Below are positions 33,516-64,000 of a DNA stretch of 64,000 nucleotides, piece by piece; positions within the stretch are counted from its first letter, which is position 1; each line of letters begins with the position of its first letter. The notes under the pieces were generated by a model, which did no database searches, was not told the DNA's origin, and worked only from the letters and a program-made list of their open reading frames with translations. Source of the DNA: Octopus vulgaris (Eukaryota); contig OX597814.1 of the NCBI GenBank assembly GCA_951406725.2, positions 96,410,001 to 96,474,000 on the forward strand. Reading direction: 5' to 3'. A program made the position numbers and the translations under genes.

Positions 33516-34150
33516 TTCAGATGTTTGTCAATGGGTATTTTCTGGTACAGGGATCTTGTATCTGTTCACAATGGACCGTCATTCTGTGTATCATAGTTAA
33601 TTCTGATTAAACCATGATGTCTTCATTACACGCATTGCATTTGATAACATAAATCAGAATTTTTGATGCACAAATAAAGTTATATATAGTAAATGTATGA
33701 CCTTCATATGCCGAGCTCTCTATGAGGTTGATGCAGATTCTTCTATTAGAGCGGTTCCATTGGGGCTGTATTTTTGGTGTGTTATTTCATATTGGTAATT
33801 TTAAAAAAGACTTTGGTTGCTTTTTATACTTTTACTATTTGAGTGTGTGTGTATGAGTGTGTGTTTCGAGTGCCCTTTTTCATTTGTGAGCCGTTCATCA
33901 AACTAGGAATGTTCTGATGCCTGTTGCATGATTCAATGTTTTTTAGATTGTGTGTTGATATGTGAAATAAACTATTCAATGTATCAGGTTGTTAATTTCT
34001 TTTCGTAATTCTTGAATTTCTATTGTTTCTGCATATTCTACTCCGTTATTGCTTAAAATAACTGGATATTGTCTCTCGAATAAAATACTTTAAAATGTTT
34101 ATAGTCATTTCTTCCGGGTTTTTGGATGGGATACAATTGTACAGATTCTG
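33516..34150 (-). mobile_element. Penelope-like element remnant (RT thumb to GIY-YIG endonuclease), interrupted by the MITE
   Basis: LKYFIRETISSYLSNNGVEYAETIEIQELRK and KILIYVIKCNACNED..MIHRMTVHCEQIQDP. Confidence 0.65.
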
Positions 34151-35022
34151 CTTTCTGGATTATTGTGGTTATGTACAGACAGAGGAACCAAGGGAAATGG
34201 CTAGCCCGGGCAGTTCAGGTCTGGGGCATAAACAAGTAAATACGAATAAGAAAAGGTGGTATGTAGTAACACATGTAAAAGCACCGCCATAGAGCGAAAA
34301 AAAAAACGGAGTTTAAAGGCGCCATAAGGATTAAATTACCAGCTGAACGTTACCCGGAACACATGAATGGAGTGGTGATTGACAAGGAAAGGTTGAAGAA
34401 CTATTTGAAGGTGATGTGAACCCTTTGGGGGAAGAAACTGAATTTGAAGAACTATCAAAAGTAGTAACATACGAGGAGTTAATACCTCTAATGAATGGTA
34501 ATAAAGGAGTACATTAAAGGAAAAAAAAGGAAAGAAAAAAGAAAAAGACTTTTTAACAAAGGAGAAAAAGAAAAGAAAAAGGAAATAAATTTAAATTTAA
34601 AAAAAAAACGGTGAAAAAGATGAAAAAAGAAAAAAGAAAACTTTCATAACTTATATAAATTAACAGTAAAACGGTACTGCTTGAGAAGTGGGATTCAATG
34701 CAGCCATTTCATTATTATCATATCATTATACATTTGTTTTCATTTTCATTCGTTTTATGTTTTATATCCCCACAGTAGTGTTTTGTCTGTTCTTATGCTG
34801 TCCCCTCTATGTTATGGCATGGGCGCCAAATAAAGAAACGCAGAAGCAAGACAGCTGCGGCATAAGTCACGTCTTCTTATTTGAACATTTTGAAAATCAG
34901 TATAAACTGTGAAACCGCTTAAAGCTTTAAATATATTATTAAAAAACATTTTAACTATTCTCAGTGCATTCTCAACTTCTGTTTTTCCTATATTTCTACC
35001 CGTGTGGAATAAAATAACTTTG

Positions 35023-56510: not shown

Positions 56511-57346
56511 CTCATTAACCTTATTTAAATTTCGCAATAATATTACAACATACCCGTTCTACAATAACTACTTCTTTCTCCTCTTAATTTTTACTTCATT
56601 CCGTTTTTTCTTTCCTTTGTCGATGGCGTCTTTGTTTCATTCGTGATTATCTTTGGTTGCCGTTCGTAATTCATAATGTATATGTATAAATAGACTAATG
56701 TTTTCAGGATAGGCACAACAGTTTTTAGTAATTGTTGTTTTAGAATTGTTGGTTAAAAGTTGAATTGTTTATCGTATCTATTGTGATAGGGATATAGATT
56801 CTGTAATAAAAGGAAATCTTTCACAAGAGAGAAAAATAGCGCTCACTGACAAAAAAATATTACAGAAAGTCAAAAAGCGACATGCTGATGTATGAGTGAT
56901 TTTCAGGGCTGATCGAGTTTCCTAAAGATAGTATCAGAAAAAAAAATGAAACATTTAATAATAATATTTCTACGCAAGACAAACCTTTCTCATACACAGT
57001 GTATGTAAAAAAAAAAGATAGAAGTATAATTTTAGCAAAGCCAATACCAAAGTGAATACTTTAAATTTCCAAGAATCCCACCACCTTACACACACACACA
57101 CATACGCGCGCTTGCTTGCACACACTTGCACATTTTATTGCGAAGTGACATGAAAGGTAGTTTCAGATTATTGTTGAATTTCAAAGTCAAAGCATATCAT
57201 ATTAGTAATACTTATTTCTACAGTTTAACGTTGATATTATTCTACATTAATATAAACTTGTTATTTGAGCTATAGTTTTACGTAACGGTCTAAGTGTAAA
57301 GTAAAAACAGTACACAACAAAATGTTTATTACCTGTCTATTCATCT

Positions 57347-57772
57347 TGACTTGATTTAATAGGGTTACTAATTATCAGTTCATTTGCCAACAGAATGTGG
57401 CAGTCCTATAATGGACGATGTTACGACTGTTTAAGCCCCAGGAAAACATCTTTTCCAGCTGGCTATTGACACACAGTCTGTGTCCGTATAGTGTTTCCAA
57501 GGGATGTTATCGCTCCCTTCTCCAGCCAGTGATTGTCTCACACTGAGGACGGGTATATACCCAGAAACCATGGTCTGTGAATATCACGTAAGGCTGGAGA
57601 TGGGAGCGATGACCACCCTTGCAAACACTAATCGGACACAGACTGTGTGTCGATAGCCAGCTGGAAAAGATGTTTTCCTAGGTCTTAAACAGCAGTATCA
57701 TCGTCCTTTATAGGACTGTCACATTCTGTTGGCAAATGAACTGATAATTAGTTACCCTATTAAATCAAATCA
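57347..57772. repeat. Long inverted repeat: 181-bp arms (57347-57527, 57592-57772), 64-bp spacer
   Basis: The arms are reverse complements with roughly 15 mismatches by eye; 57773-57835 is a further partial, diverged copy of the arm. Confidence 0.95.
57529..57587 (+). ncRNA. Type I hammerhead ribozyme, GUC site (cut after 57575)
   Basis: CUGAGGA 57543-49; stem II GGG/CCC with loop UAUAUA and a C.A at 10.1-11.1; GAAA 57564-67; palindromic stem III ACCAUGGU; stem I UCACA/UGUGA, internal loop, then GUGAU/AUCAC. Confidence 0.8.
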
Positions 57773-58329
57773 ATGGGGTTTAAACAACAGTAACATCGGC
57801 CTTGATAGGATCGCCACATTCTGTTGGTTAATAAACTTTACTATTCCGTACTGTTACTGTATATCTCTCGCTGAGAGATTTAAAACAAGTTATTATCAGT
57901 GTCGACAGTATATTAATTATCCATTGTCAATGGGTTTACAGTTCTACACCTCTAATTTATAGTGTATTATTAATGCTATGAATAATCTAATTCGTTCAAC
58001 CGATTCTATTTATGAGAGAAAAAAATTAATCTTTGTTGTCTTATGACGAGTTTAAAGCACCGAAAGGGGAAAATCATTATGGTAAATCTATCAATTAGCA
58101 TCCGACAAGAGTTAACTCTACTCATTTACAGTTGTCATTCAATTCGATTTTTGTAATGTTTTTGATTTAAATGCATTGGAACTCAGATTGTTTTGAATGT
58201 TGTATCAACTTCAAGCACCCAGTTGTTCATAAAAGGTGAAGGTTTATATTACTATAGTGATACAGCATGTACAGAATCACTGAATTGGAATTAAAAGCTT
58301 CAAAGCGTTTAGAGCAAAAAACCTTGAAT

Positions 58330-59150
58330 ATGCAGGGCTTTTACTAAATGCTGTGCTGTTCAGACGTGAAACGGGGCAAGACAAGATGGTGAAGTGGCAA
58401 TAGATGACGAAGACGATGTAGACATTCGACAAATCTGCTCGACCTTTCAGATATAGCTTCCTCTTATCCCATTTCAGAGTGAGACTGGCCACTCTGCTCG
58501 TTACCTCGTTATAGTTCTTGTCCAGTTGGAGATTTTGACCTAACAAAAGCTCGAGTAATTTAACTGGTCCTTCAATTCGACGTCCTACGACACTGTCAGA
58601 TGGCATGAGCTGCCTCTCCAAGTACAGAGCTGCATTCCTTCTGACTTATGTCGGCTAATCTTTGCTCCTATCACCTCGATGTGTTTGGTGTCCGATACTA
58701 ATACTTATTTCTTTATTACCCACAAGGGGCTAAACATAGAGGGGACAAATAAGGACAGACATAGGTATTAAGTCGATTACATCGACCCCAGTGCGTAACT
58801 GGTACTTAATTTATAGACCCTGAAAGGATGAAAGGTAAAGTCGACCTCGGCGGAATTTGAACTCACAACGTAACGGCAAACGAAATACTGCTAAGCATTT
58901 CGCCCTGAGTGCTAACGTTTCTGCCAGCTCGCCGCCTTACTAATACTGTGCGATACTAATACTGTGCGGTCCGATACTAATACTGTGCGGTCGTCCACAT
59001 ACATCGACACAGAACTTCCACACCCGAAATCATACGTAATCTCCCTTATCCTACCTAATTTCCGCAATAGTGGCTCTAGAATCAATGTATACGAAAGACG
59101 CGCGAGTGAACTACCTTGACTGACTGAGCGCATGTTATGATTTCTGCATA
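58330..59150 (-). mobile_element. Tx1/L1-clade LINE RT fragment, interrupted by a SINE
   Basis: SVSQGSSLARLSYTLILEPLLRKL..SMYVDD; VVGRRIEGPVKLL..EVTSRVASL..LYLKGRA. Confidence 0.8.
58706..58938 (-). mobile_element. Full-length SINE family A with a 9-bp TSD
   Basis: TSD ACTAATACT at 58697-58705 and 58939-58947. Confidence 0.92.
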
Positions 59151-59679: not shown

Positions 59680-59810
59680 CTAAAGGTACAAGGTCTGAAA
59701 TTTTGAGGGAGGGAACTAGTCGATTACAAAGACCCCATTTTTTTCATTGGTACTTAATTTATTGACCCCGAAAGTATGAAAAGCAAAGTCATCCTCGGTT
59801 GAATTTTAAT
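59680..59810 (-). mobile_element. SINE family A 3' fragment
   Basis: Similarity to other copies. Confidence 0.7.
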
Positions 59811-59865
59811 GATAATAATAATAATGATGATGATGATGATAATGATGATGATGATGATGATGATG

Positions 59866-59936
<71 letters not shown>

Positions 59937-59950
59937 AAGAAGAAGAAGAA
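59810..59950. repeat. Compound trinucleotide array (GAT)n(AAT)n(GAA)n
   Basis: Direct reading. Confidence 0.95.
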
Positions 59951-60790
59951 CAGGGTGAAGGAAGTGTAGCAACTGTTGTTGCAAAGAAAGTAAAATTAAT
60001 TGTAAAGGTGGGATTAGAAACCTCTGCATAGCAAATATGTGGCCCGTAGCAAACAAGCTGATATTGACCAGCAGCTTACCCATCAATGGCTACGAAGCTC
60101 AGAGCTAAAGGCAGAGGGTGAAGGCTTCATTTTAGCTGCTCATGATCAAAGCTTATAGTCCCGGAACTACCAATTCAATGTAATGAAAAATGGAGTCGAT
60201 CCAAAGTGCGAATTCTGCAATGATGAGAATGAAACAGTGGACCACTTAATCTCTGGATGTTAATATGTTGGTATTATAAAATCAAAACTGTTGGCAAGTG
60301 GTATAAGCATCACTCTGAGGCTGTAGCTGAGTGAGAGAATACAACAATTCTTTGTTACTGTCCTGTATATCCAGACAGAACCAGCGAAGCTAATAAACTG
60401 GATATTATTGTAAGCGAAAACAATATTAGAATTTGTTTATTGATTGACATGAATATTCCTTGTGATAATAATATTGCAACAAATGTAACATCTGAAGATG
60501 GTTACAATACCAGTGGTTGTAGCAGCATTAGAAATGATCAAAGAATGGACTCAAAATTATTTGAGAATGATTCCTGGCTTACCATCTCAGCAAGAAGCGC
60601 AAAATATTGTTTTAACTGGTGCGTCACACGCAATGAGAGAAGCATTGTCGCTGTGAGAAGGCTAATCTTCCATATGAATAATCTGGTGTGTTTACTTTAA
60701 TGGCCTATCAAGTTATATACAGTGAGTTTCTTTGTCCTAGGTGTCAGGAAGACACTCAGTAAGAAATGAAAACAAGATTGAAGGAAGAAG
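59950..60790 (+). mobile_element. R4/Dong-clade LINE 3' fragment (CCHC finger and RLE endonuclease region)
   Basis: HQWLRSSELKAEGEGFILAAHDQSL, DPKCEFCNDENETVDHLISGC, LIDMNIPCDNNIA; trinucleotide tail. Confidence 0.85.
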
Positions 60791-60807
60791 AAAACTCATA
60801 ATAATAA

Positions 60808-60880
<73 letters not shown>

Positions 60881-60881
60881 T

Positions 60882-60917
<36 letters not shown>

Positions 60918-60946
60918 TTAGTAGTAGTATTTTGTAGAAGTAGTAT

Positions 60947-61005
<59 letters not shown>
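60787..61005. repeat. (TAG)n array with an embedded (CAG)n
   Basis: Direct reading. Confidence 0.95.
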
Positions 61006-61469
61006 ACAAGTCTAATAATATATTTAAACTTTTTGGTAAACAAACTGTTACACAAAACAATCTCAAACGACCTCAATCTGCCGTGAGTTGTGCAACAGCC
61101 AATGTTAGTAAGTAAAGTTTGTGCTTTGATGTAGAAACCGAGTGTTGTAAAATATTTAATACTGTGTCTGTGGCTAACATTGTGTAGACAATAAGAGTTA
61201 TGAGTAACACTGATAACAACTCGAAAAACATATATTTTCCACTTTGTTACATGTATATAACTTTGTTTGTTTACTGCTTTGATAAGCATTTTGAACCAAG
61301 AGATTTTCTTTTAACAGGTTATACGACTTGAAATAATAAGCTCCGAAGATTTTTTATTGTTAAATAAATTATATTAACAAAAAAGTTATAAACAGTGATA
61401 ATTAGCTAACTAGAACGTGATACAAATGGGAGCCTGCCCTGTAACTACATAATGTTGTTAAACAGCTCT

Positions 61470-63317: not shown

Positions 63318-64000
63318 AGCATAATTAAATCTCAGAATGAGATTGAAACAGTAATCACTCGATAATGTAAAGTATAGAAGCCATCTTATCATGGCTAACC
63401 ACATTGGGGAGGGGGTGTTACTGTAGCTTTATAGCCCCAAGAGATCGTCGTCTCTAGCTGGCTTTAGACACAATATCAGTGCCTTGGAGTATTTGCAAAG
63501 GGAGGCCATCCTTCCTCGCAAGCCTGAGTGATACGCTCGAACTAGTTTCGGGATTTTTGTCCCTTGTCAACGGGCGGTAACCACCAGGTCGCGATGAAAG
63601 TGAAGGCTGCTTTGCAAATATATAAGTTTTTCTAGTGGCGTCTGCCACTGATGTCGAAAAACTAACAGTAAGCATAATTAAATCTCAGAATGAGATTGAA
63701 ACAGTAATCTCTCGATAATGTAGAAGCCATCTTATCATGGCTAACCACATTGGGGAGGGGGTGTTACTGTAGGTTTATTCTGAGATTTAATTATGCTTAC
63801 TGTTAGTTTTTCGACATCAGTGGCAGACGCCACTAGAAAAACTTATATATTTGCAAAGCAGTCTTCACTTTCATCGCGACCTGGTGGTTACCGCCCATTG
63901 ACAAGGGACAAAAATCCCGAAACTAGTTCGAGCGTATCACTCAGGCTTGCGAGGAAGGGATGGCCTCCCTTTGCAAATACTCCAAGACATTGATATTGTG
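63318..64000. repeat. 353-bp unit in 1.3 tandem copies followed by an inverted copy (Penelope pLTR / retrozyme-like)
   Basis: Direct repeat 63318-63426 / 63671-63772; inverted arms 63469-63691 / 63777-64000 (runs off the window). Confidence 0.92.
63527..63585 (-). ncRNA. Type I hammerhead fold with a decayed core (UUGACAA for CUGANGA)
   Basis: Stem II GGGA/UCCC, GAAA, palindrome AACUAGUU, stem I CGCCCG/CGAGCG plus GGUGGU/AUCACU; mirror copy on + at about 63883-63941. Confidence 0.55.

What the first reader, a model, noticed from the sequence alone, without database searches (positions are those of the whole stretch)
57347..57835. Hammerhead ribozyme at the apex of a 181-bp hairpin
The 64-nt spacer of a long inverted repeat is almost entirely a type I hammerhead. 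It has an intact CUGAGGA/GAAA/GUC core, a palindromic stem III, and a bulged stem I facing a 6-nt stem II loop. The only defect is a C.A at 10.1-11.1. A plus-strand transcript would form a rod-like RNA of about 425 nt that could cut itself at the tip and leave a long duplex, a possible Dicer/ADAR substrate or replication intermediate. The simpler reading is a Penelope-type inverted terminal duplication joined just upstream of the ribozyme. No ORF and no TSD were seen.
Basis: partly seen in the sequence, partly recalled or inferred. Interest (0 to 1): 0.85.

Follow-up and report, generated by a model that had tools for sequence, protein, structure and literature searches.

The report
Head-to-head retroelement copies, hammerhead at tip
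The long hairpin is two truncated copies of a short, old, Penelope-like retroelement inserted head to head, one copy keeping the family's own hammerhead-type ribozyme motif; it looks like a recurrent, neutrally decaying insertion by-product, not a purpose-built RNA.

Summary
The sequence features are real. The arms are 182 nt and 91% complementary, with a 64-nt spacer that holds a CUGAGGA / GAAA / GUC hammerhead core with helices I and II.

The hairpin belongs to a dispersed repeat of about 350 bp, with at least 3,500 first-look candidates in this 2.8-Gb genome. The family shows the structural hallmarks of Penelope-like elements (PLEs):
- partial tandems;
- two alternative 3' ends separated by an optional tail;
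- insertion into microsatellites;
- frequent inverted, 5'-truncated partner copies.

Head-to-head copies recur, in 5 of the 40 best single-arm loci. Their junctions differ, their tails are often unequal, and their arms group by locus. The architecture is therefore re-made at insertion and not inherited. The ordinary unit already folds into a 144-nt hairpin with the ribozyme at its tip, and the window's junction (CAGCC) lies at the base of that natural stem.

The hammerhead motif is a selected family trait. Helix II shows G-C to A-U covariation and loop 3 stays palindromic as AU or UA. The C.A at 10.1/11.1 is ancestral, not a local defect. No Rfam model matches. Helix III needs a second copy, which this locus lacks.

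The arms have decayed about as much as solo copies. No autonomous partner element was found. The finding is ordinary and of modest interest.

The parts
57346..57376 (-). Inverted copy of a 31-nt non-family extension, at the outer end of the left arm
   Evidence: 29/31 identical to the reverse complement of 57743-57773. The sequence occurs nowhere else in the genome.
57377..57527 (-). Left arm: an inverted copy holding only the family's 3' region (arm positions 1-151), 5'-truncated before the ribozyme
   Evidence: 92.7% identical to the family consensus on the minus strand.
57523..57527 (.). Junction microhomology CAGCC. It is shared by the end of the inverted arm (…CTCCAGCC) and the ordinary upstream sequence (…AACAGCC).
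   Evidence: Crossover mapped against both parental sequences. Homology to solo copies starts at query base 178 = 57523.
57529..57587 (+). Type I, dimer-type hammerhead motif (core 57543-49, GAAA 57564-67, C17 57575, predicted cut 57575|57576)
   Evidence: Direct reading. Family-wide covariation. No Rfam match.
57592..57742 (+). Right arm: the 3' region of the plus-strand copy. The whole plus-strand copy is 57523-57742 and lacks the last 6 nt of the usual E1 end.
   Evidence: 93.5% identical to the consensus over unit positions 1-216.
57743..57773 (+). 31-nt non-family extension, mirrored at 57346-57376
57774..57894 (+). Separate 5'-truncated copy of the same family (last 70 nt of the arm plus the optional tail, ending at the E2 end). 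It is not part of the hairpin.
   Evidence: 93% identical to the consensus over 121 nt. It explains repeats D1 and I2.

Best explanation
The locus is an old, complex insertion of a short (about 350 bp) non-autonomous retroelement that behaves like a Penelope-like element (PLE), that is, a retrozyme-type derivative.

The ordinary unit reads: 5' part, then a 64-nt hammerhead, then a 151-157-nt 3' region, then an optional tail of about 57 nt. Its RNA is itself a quasi-palindrome. About 40 imperfect base pairs extend helix I, so the ribozyme sits at the tip of a natural 144-nt hairpin.

In the window, two 5'-truncated copies lie head to head. The plus-strand copy (57523-57742) keeps the ribozyme. 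The minus-strand copy (57377-57527) stops just short of it. They are joined at a 5-nt microhomology at the base of the natural stem.

Inferred mechanism. During target-primed reverse transcription, one of two things happened. Either the nascent cDNA, once past the ribozyme, snapped back on its own complementary stretch and copied itself and 31 nt of adjoining DNA. Or cDNAs primed from both cut DNA strands were joined where the element is self-complementary.

The result is a by-product. It recurs in the family with different junctions, and here it has since decayed neutrally. The hammerhead motif is a genuine, selected feature of the family's source elements. In this solitary copy it is unlikely to cleave efficiently.

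Shown: the anatomy, family membership, recurrence with variable junctions, neutral decay, and covariation in the ribozyme. Inferred: the reverse-transcription mechanism and the PLE identity of the mobilising enzyme.
For: Family and unit.
- The hairpin query has 3,240 first-look candidates, and most hits cover only ribozyme plus one arm. A single-arm consensus has 3,550 candidates.
- Alignment of 18 solo copies gives the unit and shows upstream partial tandems.

PLE hallmarks as described in PMC8557442 and PMC11167929.
- Partial tandem copies.
- Two alternative 3' ends: E1 (…AAATAAACTTTACTA) and E2 (…AAAACAAGTTGTTT). They are separated by an optional tail that contains the stem-loop TCTCTCGCTGAGAGA.
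- Flanks on both sides are (TA)n, (GT)n, (ATT)n or (TATC)n microsatellites.
- Inverted 5'-truncated partner copies.
- The genome is rich in PLEs with intact RT plus C-terminal GIY-YIG ORFs.
- A purified PLE protein cleaves and extends both DNA strands and starts reverse transcription at two internal sites (PMC11167929).

Recurrence, not inheritance.
- The 9 aligned hairpin loci show at least 5 junction classes, all at stretches shared by the 5' part and the reverse-complemented arm.
- Two further loci join arm to arm with no ribozyme between them.
- Tails are unequal between the two arms in 6 of 8 other hairpins.
- The two arms of one locus are sisters in L005, L012, L027 and L003. The hairpin label needs 7 changes on the tree.

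Natural quasi-palindrome. The ordinary consensus folds as a 144-nt hairpin with the ribozyme at the tip, -66.6 kcal/mol, z = -7.6.

Neutral decay. Each window arm has 9-10 differences from the consensus and only 2 are shared. Arm identities to the consensus (93%) fall within the range of solo copies, 87-97%.

Ribozyme selected at family level. Among 84 intact cores genome-wide:
- loop 3 is CCUAGG in 65, CCAUGG in 15 and non-palindromic in 4;
- pair 10.4-11.4 is A-U in 39 and G-C in 25;
- position 11.1 is A in 82 of 84, and position 10.1 is C in 60 and T in 17.
The covariation score is 0.148 against 0.108 in shuffles, with 0 of 500 shuffles reaching it.
Against: - No autonomous element sharing sequence with the unit was found. 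Thirty GIY-YIG loci share no DNA with it. No family copy lies within 55 kb of any of 148 GIY-YIG hits. The PLE assignment therefore rests on structural hallmarks only.
- The optional tail is about 57 nt, longer than the 30-40 bp described for PLEs.
- The window differs from the other hairpins. Both arms end at the same position and carry the same 31 nt, which is unique in the genome. Copying of one arm from the other fits this, including a DNA-level event after insertion. Two independent primings fit it less well.
- The sample of hairpin loci is biased towards hairpins, because both arms score against the query.
- No target-site duplication was found.
Confidence: 0.75

Rival explanations
1. 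Post-insertional DNA-level palindrome. An ordinary solo copy inserted first. Later, a replication template switch at the element's natural quasi-palindrome (quasi-palindrome 'correction') replaced its 5' part with an inverted copy of the arm plus 31 nt of flanking DNA.
For: - Both arms end at the same family position and carry the same 31-nt sequence, which is unique in the genome.
- The junction sits at a microhomology inside the natural hairpin.
Against: - Only 2 of about 10 differences from the consensus are shared by the two arms. The duplication therefore dates to about the time of insertion.
- Head-to-head copies recur in the family with unequal tails and microsatellite flanks on both sides, which points to the integration step.
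- The end product is indistinguishable from cDNA snap-back that runs on into target DNA.
Confidence: 0.15
2. Functional hairpin RNA. The locus is kept because its transcript forms a roughly 425-nt rod that nicks itself at the tip and feeds Dicer or ADAR, or acts as a replication intermediate.
For: - The core is intact. This is one of only 15 genome copies matching CTGAGGA-N12-16-GAAACCATGGTC, and one of 84 when loop 3 is allowed to be WW.
- The fold is extremely stable.
Against: - The arms decay at the same rate as solo copies, with 17 uncompensated mismatches.
- Other hairpins have different junctions, and some lack the ribozyme altogether.
- The dimer-type helix III has no partner copy nearby. 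The only other copy in the window (63416-63534) is degenerate and on the other strand.
- The hammerhead fold is about 8 kcal/mol worse than a competing rod fold.
- The only Rfam hit is a generic hairpin match to MIR837, 32 bits against a gathering score of 117.
Confidence: 0.05
3. Foldback or MITE-like DNA transposon whose long terminal inverted repeats happen to enclose a ribozyme-like sequence.
For: Long inverted repeats with a short spacer, no ORF, and many copies.
Against: - Most family copies are single-armed, with a fixed 3' end and variable 5' truncation or a partial tandem.
- There is no target-site duplication.
- Arm ends are unequal in most hairpin copies.
- Junctions vary between loci.
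Confidence: 0.02

Closest known systems
Penelope-like elements: pseudo-LTRs with hammerhead motifs and complex tandem/inverted insertions (PMC8557442, PMC4209133, PMC11167929)
   Same: - Partial tandems.
- An inverted 5'-truncated copy abutting the 5' end.
- An optional tail between two reverse-transcription start sites.
- Insertion into AT-rich or microsatellite DNA.
- A type I hammerhead with a short helix III and a palindromic loop 3.
   Different: - The unit has no RT/GIY-YIG ORF, and no autonomous relative with homologous sequence was found.
- The tail is about 57 nt, not 30-40.
- The G10.1-C11.1 pair, called highly conserved in PLE hammerheads (PMC4209133), is replaced by C.A.
Metazoan non-LTR retrozymes: 170-400-bp repeats with type I hammerheads, proposed to be non-autonomous PLE derivatives (PMC7229834; bioRxiv 10.64898/2026.07.22.740005)
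   Same: - Unit size of about 350 bp and low GC content.
- A type I hammerhead that should need dimerisation.
- A strongly self-paired RNA.
- Occasional true tandem dimers: the two L022 monomers are 98.5% identical to each other.
   Different: - Most copies here are dispersed 1.0- to 1.5-mers with a single ribozyme, not multimer arrays.
- Expression and circular RNA could not be tested.
Axolotl HHR_Amex2 (PMC7229834)
   Same: A natural type I hammerhead with a mismatch at the base of helix II (U.U there, C.A here) and a 2-bp helix III capped by a tetraloop. It self-cleaves weakly as a monomer and much better as a dimer.
   Different: The mismatch is different and the loops are different. Activity of the present motif is unknown.
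LINE-1 5' inversions by twin priming (from general knowledge, not checked in a paper here)
   Same: An inverted 5' segment created during target-primed reverse transcription and joined at microhomology.
   Different: Twin priming inverts a different, upstream part of the RNA and does not create a palindrome. Here the same 3' region is present on both sides.

Membership tests
Hammerhead ribozyme, type I | Conserved core: C3-U4-G5-A6-N7-G8-A9, G12-A13-A14, A15.1-U16.1, and H17 at the cleavage site | tested here: met
   CUGAGGA at 57543-49, GAAA at 57564-67, U57574, C57575. The bare-core descriptor is expected 0.07 times per window by chance.
Hammerhead ribozyme, type I | G10.1-C11.1 pair at the base of helix II | tested here: not met
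   C57550 faces A57563. Family-wide, position 10.1 is C in 60 and T in 17 copies, and position 11.1 is A in 82 of 84. Canonical hammerheads elsewhere in this genome do have G-C.
Hammerhead ribozyme, type I | Helices I-III supported by covariation | tested here: met
   Helix II pair 10.4-11.4 is G-C in 25 and A-U in 39 copies. Loop 3 and helix III stay palindromic as AU (15) or UA (65), with 4 non-palindromic. Covariation score is 0.148 against 0.108 in shuffles, 0 of 500 reaching it; helix I is almost invariant. These counts are of copies, not of independent events.
Hammerhead ribozyme, type I | Match to a curated covariance model (Rfam RF00163 and related families) | tested here: not met
   No hit at gathering score or at E<=10. 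In the whole-genome RF00163 search only 73 of 263,122 candidates were scored, none from this family.
Hammerhead ribozyme, type I | Site-specific self-cleavage | not testable with these tools
   Needs in vitro transcription of monomer and dimer constructs.
Penelope-like element (non-autonomous derivative) | Partial tandem copies forming pseudo-LTRs, with 5' truncation | tested here: met
   An upstream partial copy (arm 3' end plus tail plus 5' part) is present in L006, L008, L009, L013, L023 and L025.
Penelope-like element (non-autonomous derivative) | Inverted 5'-truncated copy adjacent to the 5' end | tested here: met
   Ten other loci. Five of the 40 loci found with a single-arm query. Junctions are variable.
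Penelope-like element (non-autonomous derivative) | Optional 30-40-bp tail lying between two reverse-transcription start sites | tested here: inconclusive
   Two alternative ends, E1 and E2, are clear, but they lie about 57 nt apart. The window's own 31-nt extension is not family sequence.
Penelope-like element (non-autonomous derivative) | Preference for AT-rich or microsatellite targets | tested here: met
   Microsatellites abut the element ends, often on both sides. The window copy itself is not in a microsatellite.
Penelope-like element (non-autonomous derivative) | Sequence shared with an autonomous RT plus GIY-YIG element | tested here: inconclusive
   None in 30 PLE loci. No co-location within 55 kb.
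Non-LTR retrozyme | Tandem arrays of 170-400-bp monomers, each with a type I hammerhead | tested here: inconclusive
   The unit is about 350 bp. One clear tandem dimer was seen (L022, monomer spacing 347 bp). Most copies carry a single ribozyme.
Non-LTR retrozyme | Expression as linear and circular RNAs | not testable with these tools
   No transcriptome data were available.

The most novel reading that the evidence does not exclude
Head-to-head insertions at the ribozyme's natural quasi-palindrome might be a systematic source of long hairpin RNAs, each capped by a hammerhead. If transcribed, these would be nicked at the tip and processed into small RNAs, or heavily A-to-I edited, so the element family would generate its own silencing triggers. 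A related possibility is that the conserved C.A (a potential A+.C wobble) at the base of helix II is a built-in attenuator or pH switch of cleavage.
Probability: 0.07. Interest if true: 0.55.

Novelty: new member of a known kind. Interest (0 to 1): 0.25.

Why it matters
Three points are of some value to specialists; none changes a general picture.

1. The family is a natural record of PLE-type integration. The variable head-to-head junctions all sit at microhomologies inside a self-complementary RNA region, and the tails are often unequal. This is in vivo evidence consistent with the in vitro finding that a PLE protein extends both DNA strands (PMC11167929).

2. A hammerhead lineage that keeps C.A in place of the 'highly conserved' G10.1-C11.1 pair, while still showing compensatory changes in helix II and loop 3, is missed by Rfam models. 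It widens the sequence space that descriptor searches should allow.

3. Long hairpins capped by ribozyme motifs in repeat-rich animal genomes should be read first as retroelement insertion by-products.

Tried and rejected
- Palindrome extending beyond the 31-nt extension. By eye I thought the left flank mirrored the tail and 5' part on the right. The alignment score (22-24) lies within the shuffle range (mean 18, maximum 28-33), so I rejected this.
- Source locus for the 31 nt (3' transduction). A 64-nt probe across it finds only the two copies at this locus.
- Target-site duplication. The longest shared word between the flanks is 5-7 nt and is not positioned as a duplication.
- Rfam. There are no hammerhead hits. 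The MIR837 hit (32 bits against a gathering score of 117) is a generic hairpin match.
- Autonomous partner.
  - BLAST of the unit against 30 GIY-YIG loci found nothing.
  - tblastn of PLE ORFs against the family loci found nothing adjacent.
  - A coordinate cross-match of 127 family sites with 148 GIY-YIG sites gave a nearest distance of 55 kb.
  - Canonical hammerhead loci found with RF00163 share no sequence with the unit.
The census of junctions therefore rests on 9 aligned hairpin loci plus coordinates only for the others.
- Pfam on four neighbouring ORFs gave no domains.
- A propagating hairpin subfamily. L005 and L011 share the window's junction class, but on the tree arms pair by locus and not by side.
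- The organism was not identified. I judged a large protein search not worth its cost for this question.

Full report
OBSERVATION

The inverted repeat is real. The arms are 57346-57527 and 57592-57773, 182 nt each and 91% complementary, with 64 nt between them. The 501-nt plus strand folds into a single rod at -324.9 kcal/mol with z = -35.6. The arms differ at 17 positions, so this is not a fold-back read or an assembly artefact.

Read directly, the spacer contains a type I hammerhead layout:
- Helix I: 57529-33 with 57583-87, and 57538-42 with 57576-80, separated by an internal loop.
- Core: CUGAGGA at 57543-49.
- Helix II: GGGU with ACCC, loop AUAU, flanked by C57550 and A57563.
- GAAA at 57564-67.
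- Helix III: two base pairs closed by the palindromic loop CAUG.
- C17 at 57575.

A bare-core descriptor hits only this site in the window, against 0.07 expected by chance.

Several points weaken the motif as a working ribozyme in this copy:
- No Rfam hammerhead model matches, at gathering score or at E<=10 on 601 nt. A second family member gives none either.
- The copy has lost one helix I pair: C57537 faces A57581, where the consensus has G.
- The monomeric hammerhead fold scores -7.8 kcal/mol against -15.6 for a competing rod fold.

WHAT THE SEQUENCE BELONGS TO

The window lies at G000:C1:96410001-96474000 in a 2.8-Gb eukaryotic assembly. The hairpin query has 3,240 first-look candidates, and most scored hits cover only the ribozyme plus one arm.

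Aligning 18 such solo copies gives a unit of about 350 bp with four parts:
- a 64-nt hammerhead region;
- a 151-157-nt 3' region (the 'arm'), ending …AAATAAACTTTACTA (end E1);
- an optional stretch of about 57 nt that contains the stem-loop TCTCTCGCTGAGAGA and ends …AAAACAAGTTGTTT (end E2);
- about 85 further nt that run into the next ribozyme.

Copies stop at E1 or at E2. They are usually flanked by (TA)n, (GT)n, (ATT)n or (TATC)n microsatellites, often on both sides. Several are preceded by a partial upstream copy of variable length.

These are the features listed for Penelope-like elements. PMC8557442 describes 5' truncation, partial tandems forming pseudo-LTRs, an inverted 5'-truncated copy next to the 5' end, an optional tail, a microsatellite insertion bias, and hammerheads in the pseudo-LTR. 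PMC11167929 reports that reverse transcription starts at two internal sites, with the tail being the stretch between them.

The genome carries thousands of GIY-YIG candidates, including a family with intact 781-aa ORFs. A copy I read has RT followed by a C-terminal GIY-YIG domain.

I found no autonomous element that shares sequence with the unit. No family copy lies within 55 kb of 148 GIY-YIG hits. The PLE assignment therefore rests on structure and not on homology.

THE HAIRPIN IS A RECURRENT BY-PRODUCT

Ten other loci match on both strands. That search favoured hairpins because both arms score against the query. A search with a single consensus arm is less biased: 5 of its 40 scored loci have an inverted partner, and two of those join arm to arm with no ribozyme between them.

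Nine hairpin loci were aligned and mapped against the two possible parents, the ordinary 5' part and the reverse-complemented arm. The crossover differs between loci:

| Crossover | Loci |
|---|---|
| at CAGCC | window, L005, L011 |
| at TATAGTGTTTGC | L003 |
| at …TGTGTGTCG | L021 |
| inside helix I | L004, L026, L027 |
| ambiguous | L012 |

Every crossover lies where the two parents share a few identical bases.

In 6 of 8 other hairpins one arm carries the optional tail and the other does not. The two arms therefore began at different reverse-transcription start sites.

On a tree of all arms, the two arms of one locus are sisters in L005, L012, L027 and L003. The hairpin label needs 7 changes, and left arms never group with left arms of other loci. 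Shared private substitutions say the same: 13, 9, 9 and 8 in L005, L012, L026 and L027, against a control mean of about 2.

The hairpin is therefore re-created again and again and is not copied as such. The architecture is not unique, but the junction is not a family constant either.

WHY THE RIBOZYME IS AT THE TIP

The ordinary unit is itself a quasi-palindrome. Its consensus folds into a 144-nt hairpin with the hammerhead at the apex, at -66.6 kcal/mol and z = -7.6. Any template switch guided by this self-complementarity will place the inversion point next to the ribozyme.

Two mechanisms fit, and both are inferred:
- Snap-back. After copying the ribozyme, the 3' end of the cDNA pairs with its own earlier part and copies it.
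- Priming from both strands. cDNAs primed from both cleaved DNA strands are joined where the element is self-complementary. A PLE protein has been shown in vitro to cleave and extend both strands (PMC11167929).

Unequal tails favour priming from both strands for most loci.

The window is different. Both arms stop at arm position 151 and continue with the same 31 nt (57346-76 and 57743-73, 29/31 identical), a sequence found nowhere else in the genome. That is best explained by one arm, together with 31 nt of adjoining DNA, being copied from the other. Snap-back running into target DNA would do this, and so would a DNA-level template switch soon after insertion.

The palindrome does not extend further out, and there is no target-site duplication. 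Bases 57774-57894 are a separate 5'-truncated copy that ends at E2.

NO SIGN OF SELECTION ON THE HAIRPIN

Each window arm differs from the family consensus at 9-10 of 151 positions, and only 2 of these differences are shared. Both arms are 93% identical to the consensus, inside the 87-97% range of solo copies. The duplication therefore dates to about the time of insertion, and both arms have since drifted independently, leaving 17 uncompensated mismatches.

THE RIBOZYME MOTIF AS A FAMILY TRAIT

A genome-wide pattern search found 84 copies with an intact core, against 0 for the control pattern. Among them:
- Loop 3 is CCUAGG in 65 copies, CCAUGG in 15 and non-palindromic in only 4.
- Pair 10.4-11.4 is A-U in 39, G-C in 25 and G.U in 6.
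- Position 11.1 is A in 82 of 84.
- Position 10.1 is C in 60 and T in 17. It sits in a CpG, so T is probably decay.

On 26 aligned copies the hammerhead structure gives 89.5% paired cells, against 21-46% when the partners are slid. The covariation score is 0.148 against 0.108 in shuffles, with 0 of 500 shuffles reaching it. These counts are of copies and not of independent events. They amount to roughly three source types.

Preservation of the loop 3 palindrome is the signature of hammerheads that act as dimers (PMC4209133). A mismatch at the base of helix II has a precedent in axolotl HHR_Amex2, which cleaves weakly alone and well as a dimer (PMC7229834).

The C.A is therefore ancestral and conserved, not a lesion of this copy. 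It does fail the 'highly conserved G10.1-C11.1' criterion (PMC4209133). Canonical hammerheads with G-C do exist elsewhere in this genome.

The window holds no second plus-strand copy that could supply the dimer partner. The only other copy (63416-63534) is degenerate and on the minus strand. For an anole PLE, ribozyme mutants did not affect insertion in vitro, and cleavage needed the element's protein (PMC11167929). Efficient self-cleavage of this solitary copy is therefore unlikely, but this is untested.

VERDICT

The finding is correctly observed. It is a new member of a known kind and of modest interest.

The main open points are:
- the identity of the mobilising element;
- whether the window's inversion arose during or just after insertion;
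- whether the C.A hammerhead variant is catalytically active.

Noticed in passing
L024 about 1730-1900, L028 about 1745-1900, L014 about 2170-2250 (locus coordinates): In three family loci the E1 end or early tail is followed by the same unrelated repeat (…CTTTTACTCTTTTACTTGTTTCAGTCATTTGACTGCGGCCATGCTGG…GTCGAGCAAATCGACCCC…). This may be a second abundant short element that inserts at, or is fused to, this family's 3' end.
   Followed up: no
G000, e.g. L069-L072, L074, L082, L083 (about 42-nt motifs); L060, L061, L064, L073, L079 (about 108-nt motifs): The genome also holds canonical PLE-type hammerheads (GUACCUGAAGAGACCC…GGGUCGAAACAUGUGUUGUAC) with G10.1-C11.1. A second class carries an insertion of about 60 nt in helix II. 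Both score 30-45 bits with RF00163 and are unrelated in sequence to the family studied here.
   Followed up: partly
G000, many sites, e.g. L035 and L040; open frames of 781 aa listed: A young PLE family with many copies that keep an intact 781-aa frame. A copy read in L035 has RT (YLDD) followed by a C-terminal GIY-YIG domain. It shares no DNA with the hammerhead family.
   Followed up: partly
window 33523-34158 (-): A degraded PLE RT/EN fragment, 30-43% identical to the 781-aa family ORFs and containing 12 stop codons.
   Followed up: no
window 63416-63534 (-): Another, much more diverged copy of the same family (75% identical to unit positions 55-174), on the opposite strand.
   Followed up: no
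window 58373-58606 (-): A stretch 53% identical at protein level to an ORF in PLE locus L053 that is not the PLE protein itself, probably another transposable-element fragment. Pfam finds no domain in the enclosing ORF 58277-58645.
   Followed up: no
window 59754-60089 and 60737-61115: Long simple-sequence tracts, seen as homopolymeric amino-acid runs in the ORF listing.
   Followed up: no
L022 1155-1287 and 1502-1658 (-): A true tandem dimer of the unit with monomer spacing of 347 bp; the two arms are 98.5% identical. The second monomer starts at …GAGTATCATG…, 2-3 nt downstream of the predicted ribozyme cut site. This could be chance or a 5' end made by cleavage.
   Followed up: partly
window 57567-57575 and the family consensus: In the CCAUGG subfamily, helix III and loop 3 read ACCATGG, a good start-codon context. 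In the consensus only 32 codons stay open, and the larger CCUAGG subfamily has no ATG. In the anole PLE the ORF starts inside the hammerhead (PMC11167929), so the 'arm' might descend from the start of a parental ORF.
   Followed up: no
L012 about 1560-1600 (locus coordinates, minus strand): A 19-nt internal duplication (GGATGTAACATCCAGAAACCT) inside the hammerhead of one hairpin copy.
   Followed up: no
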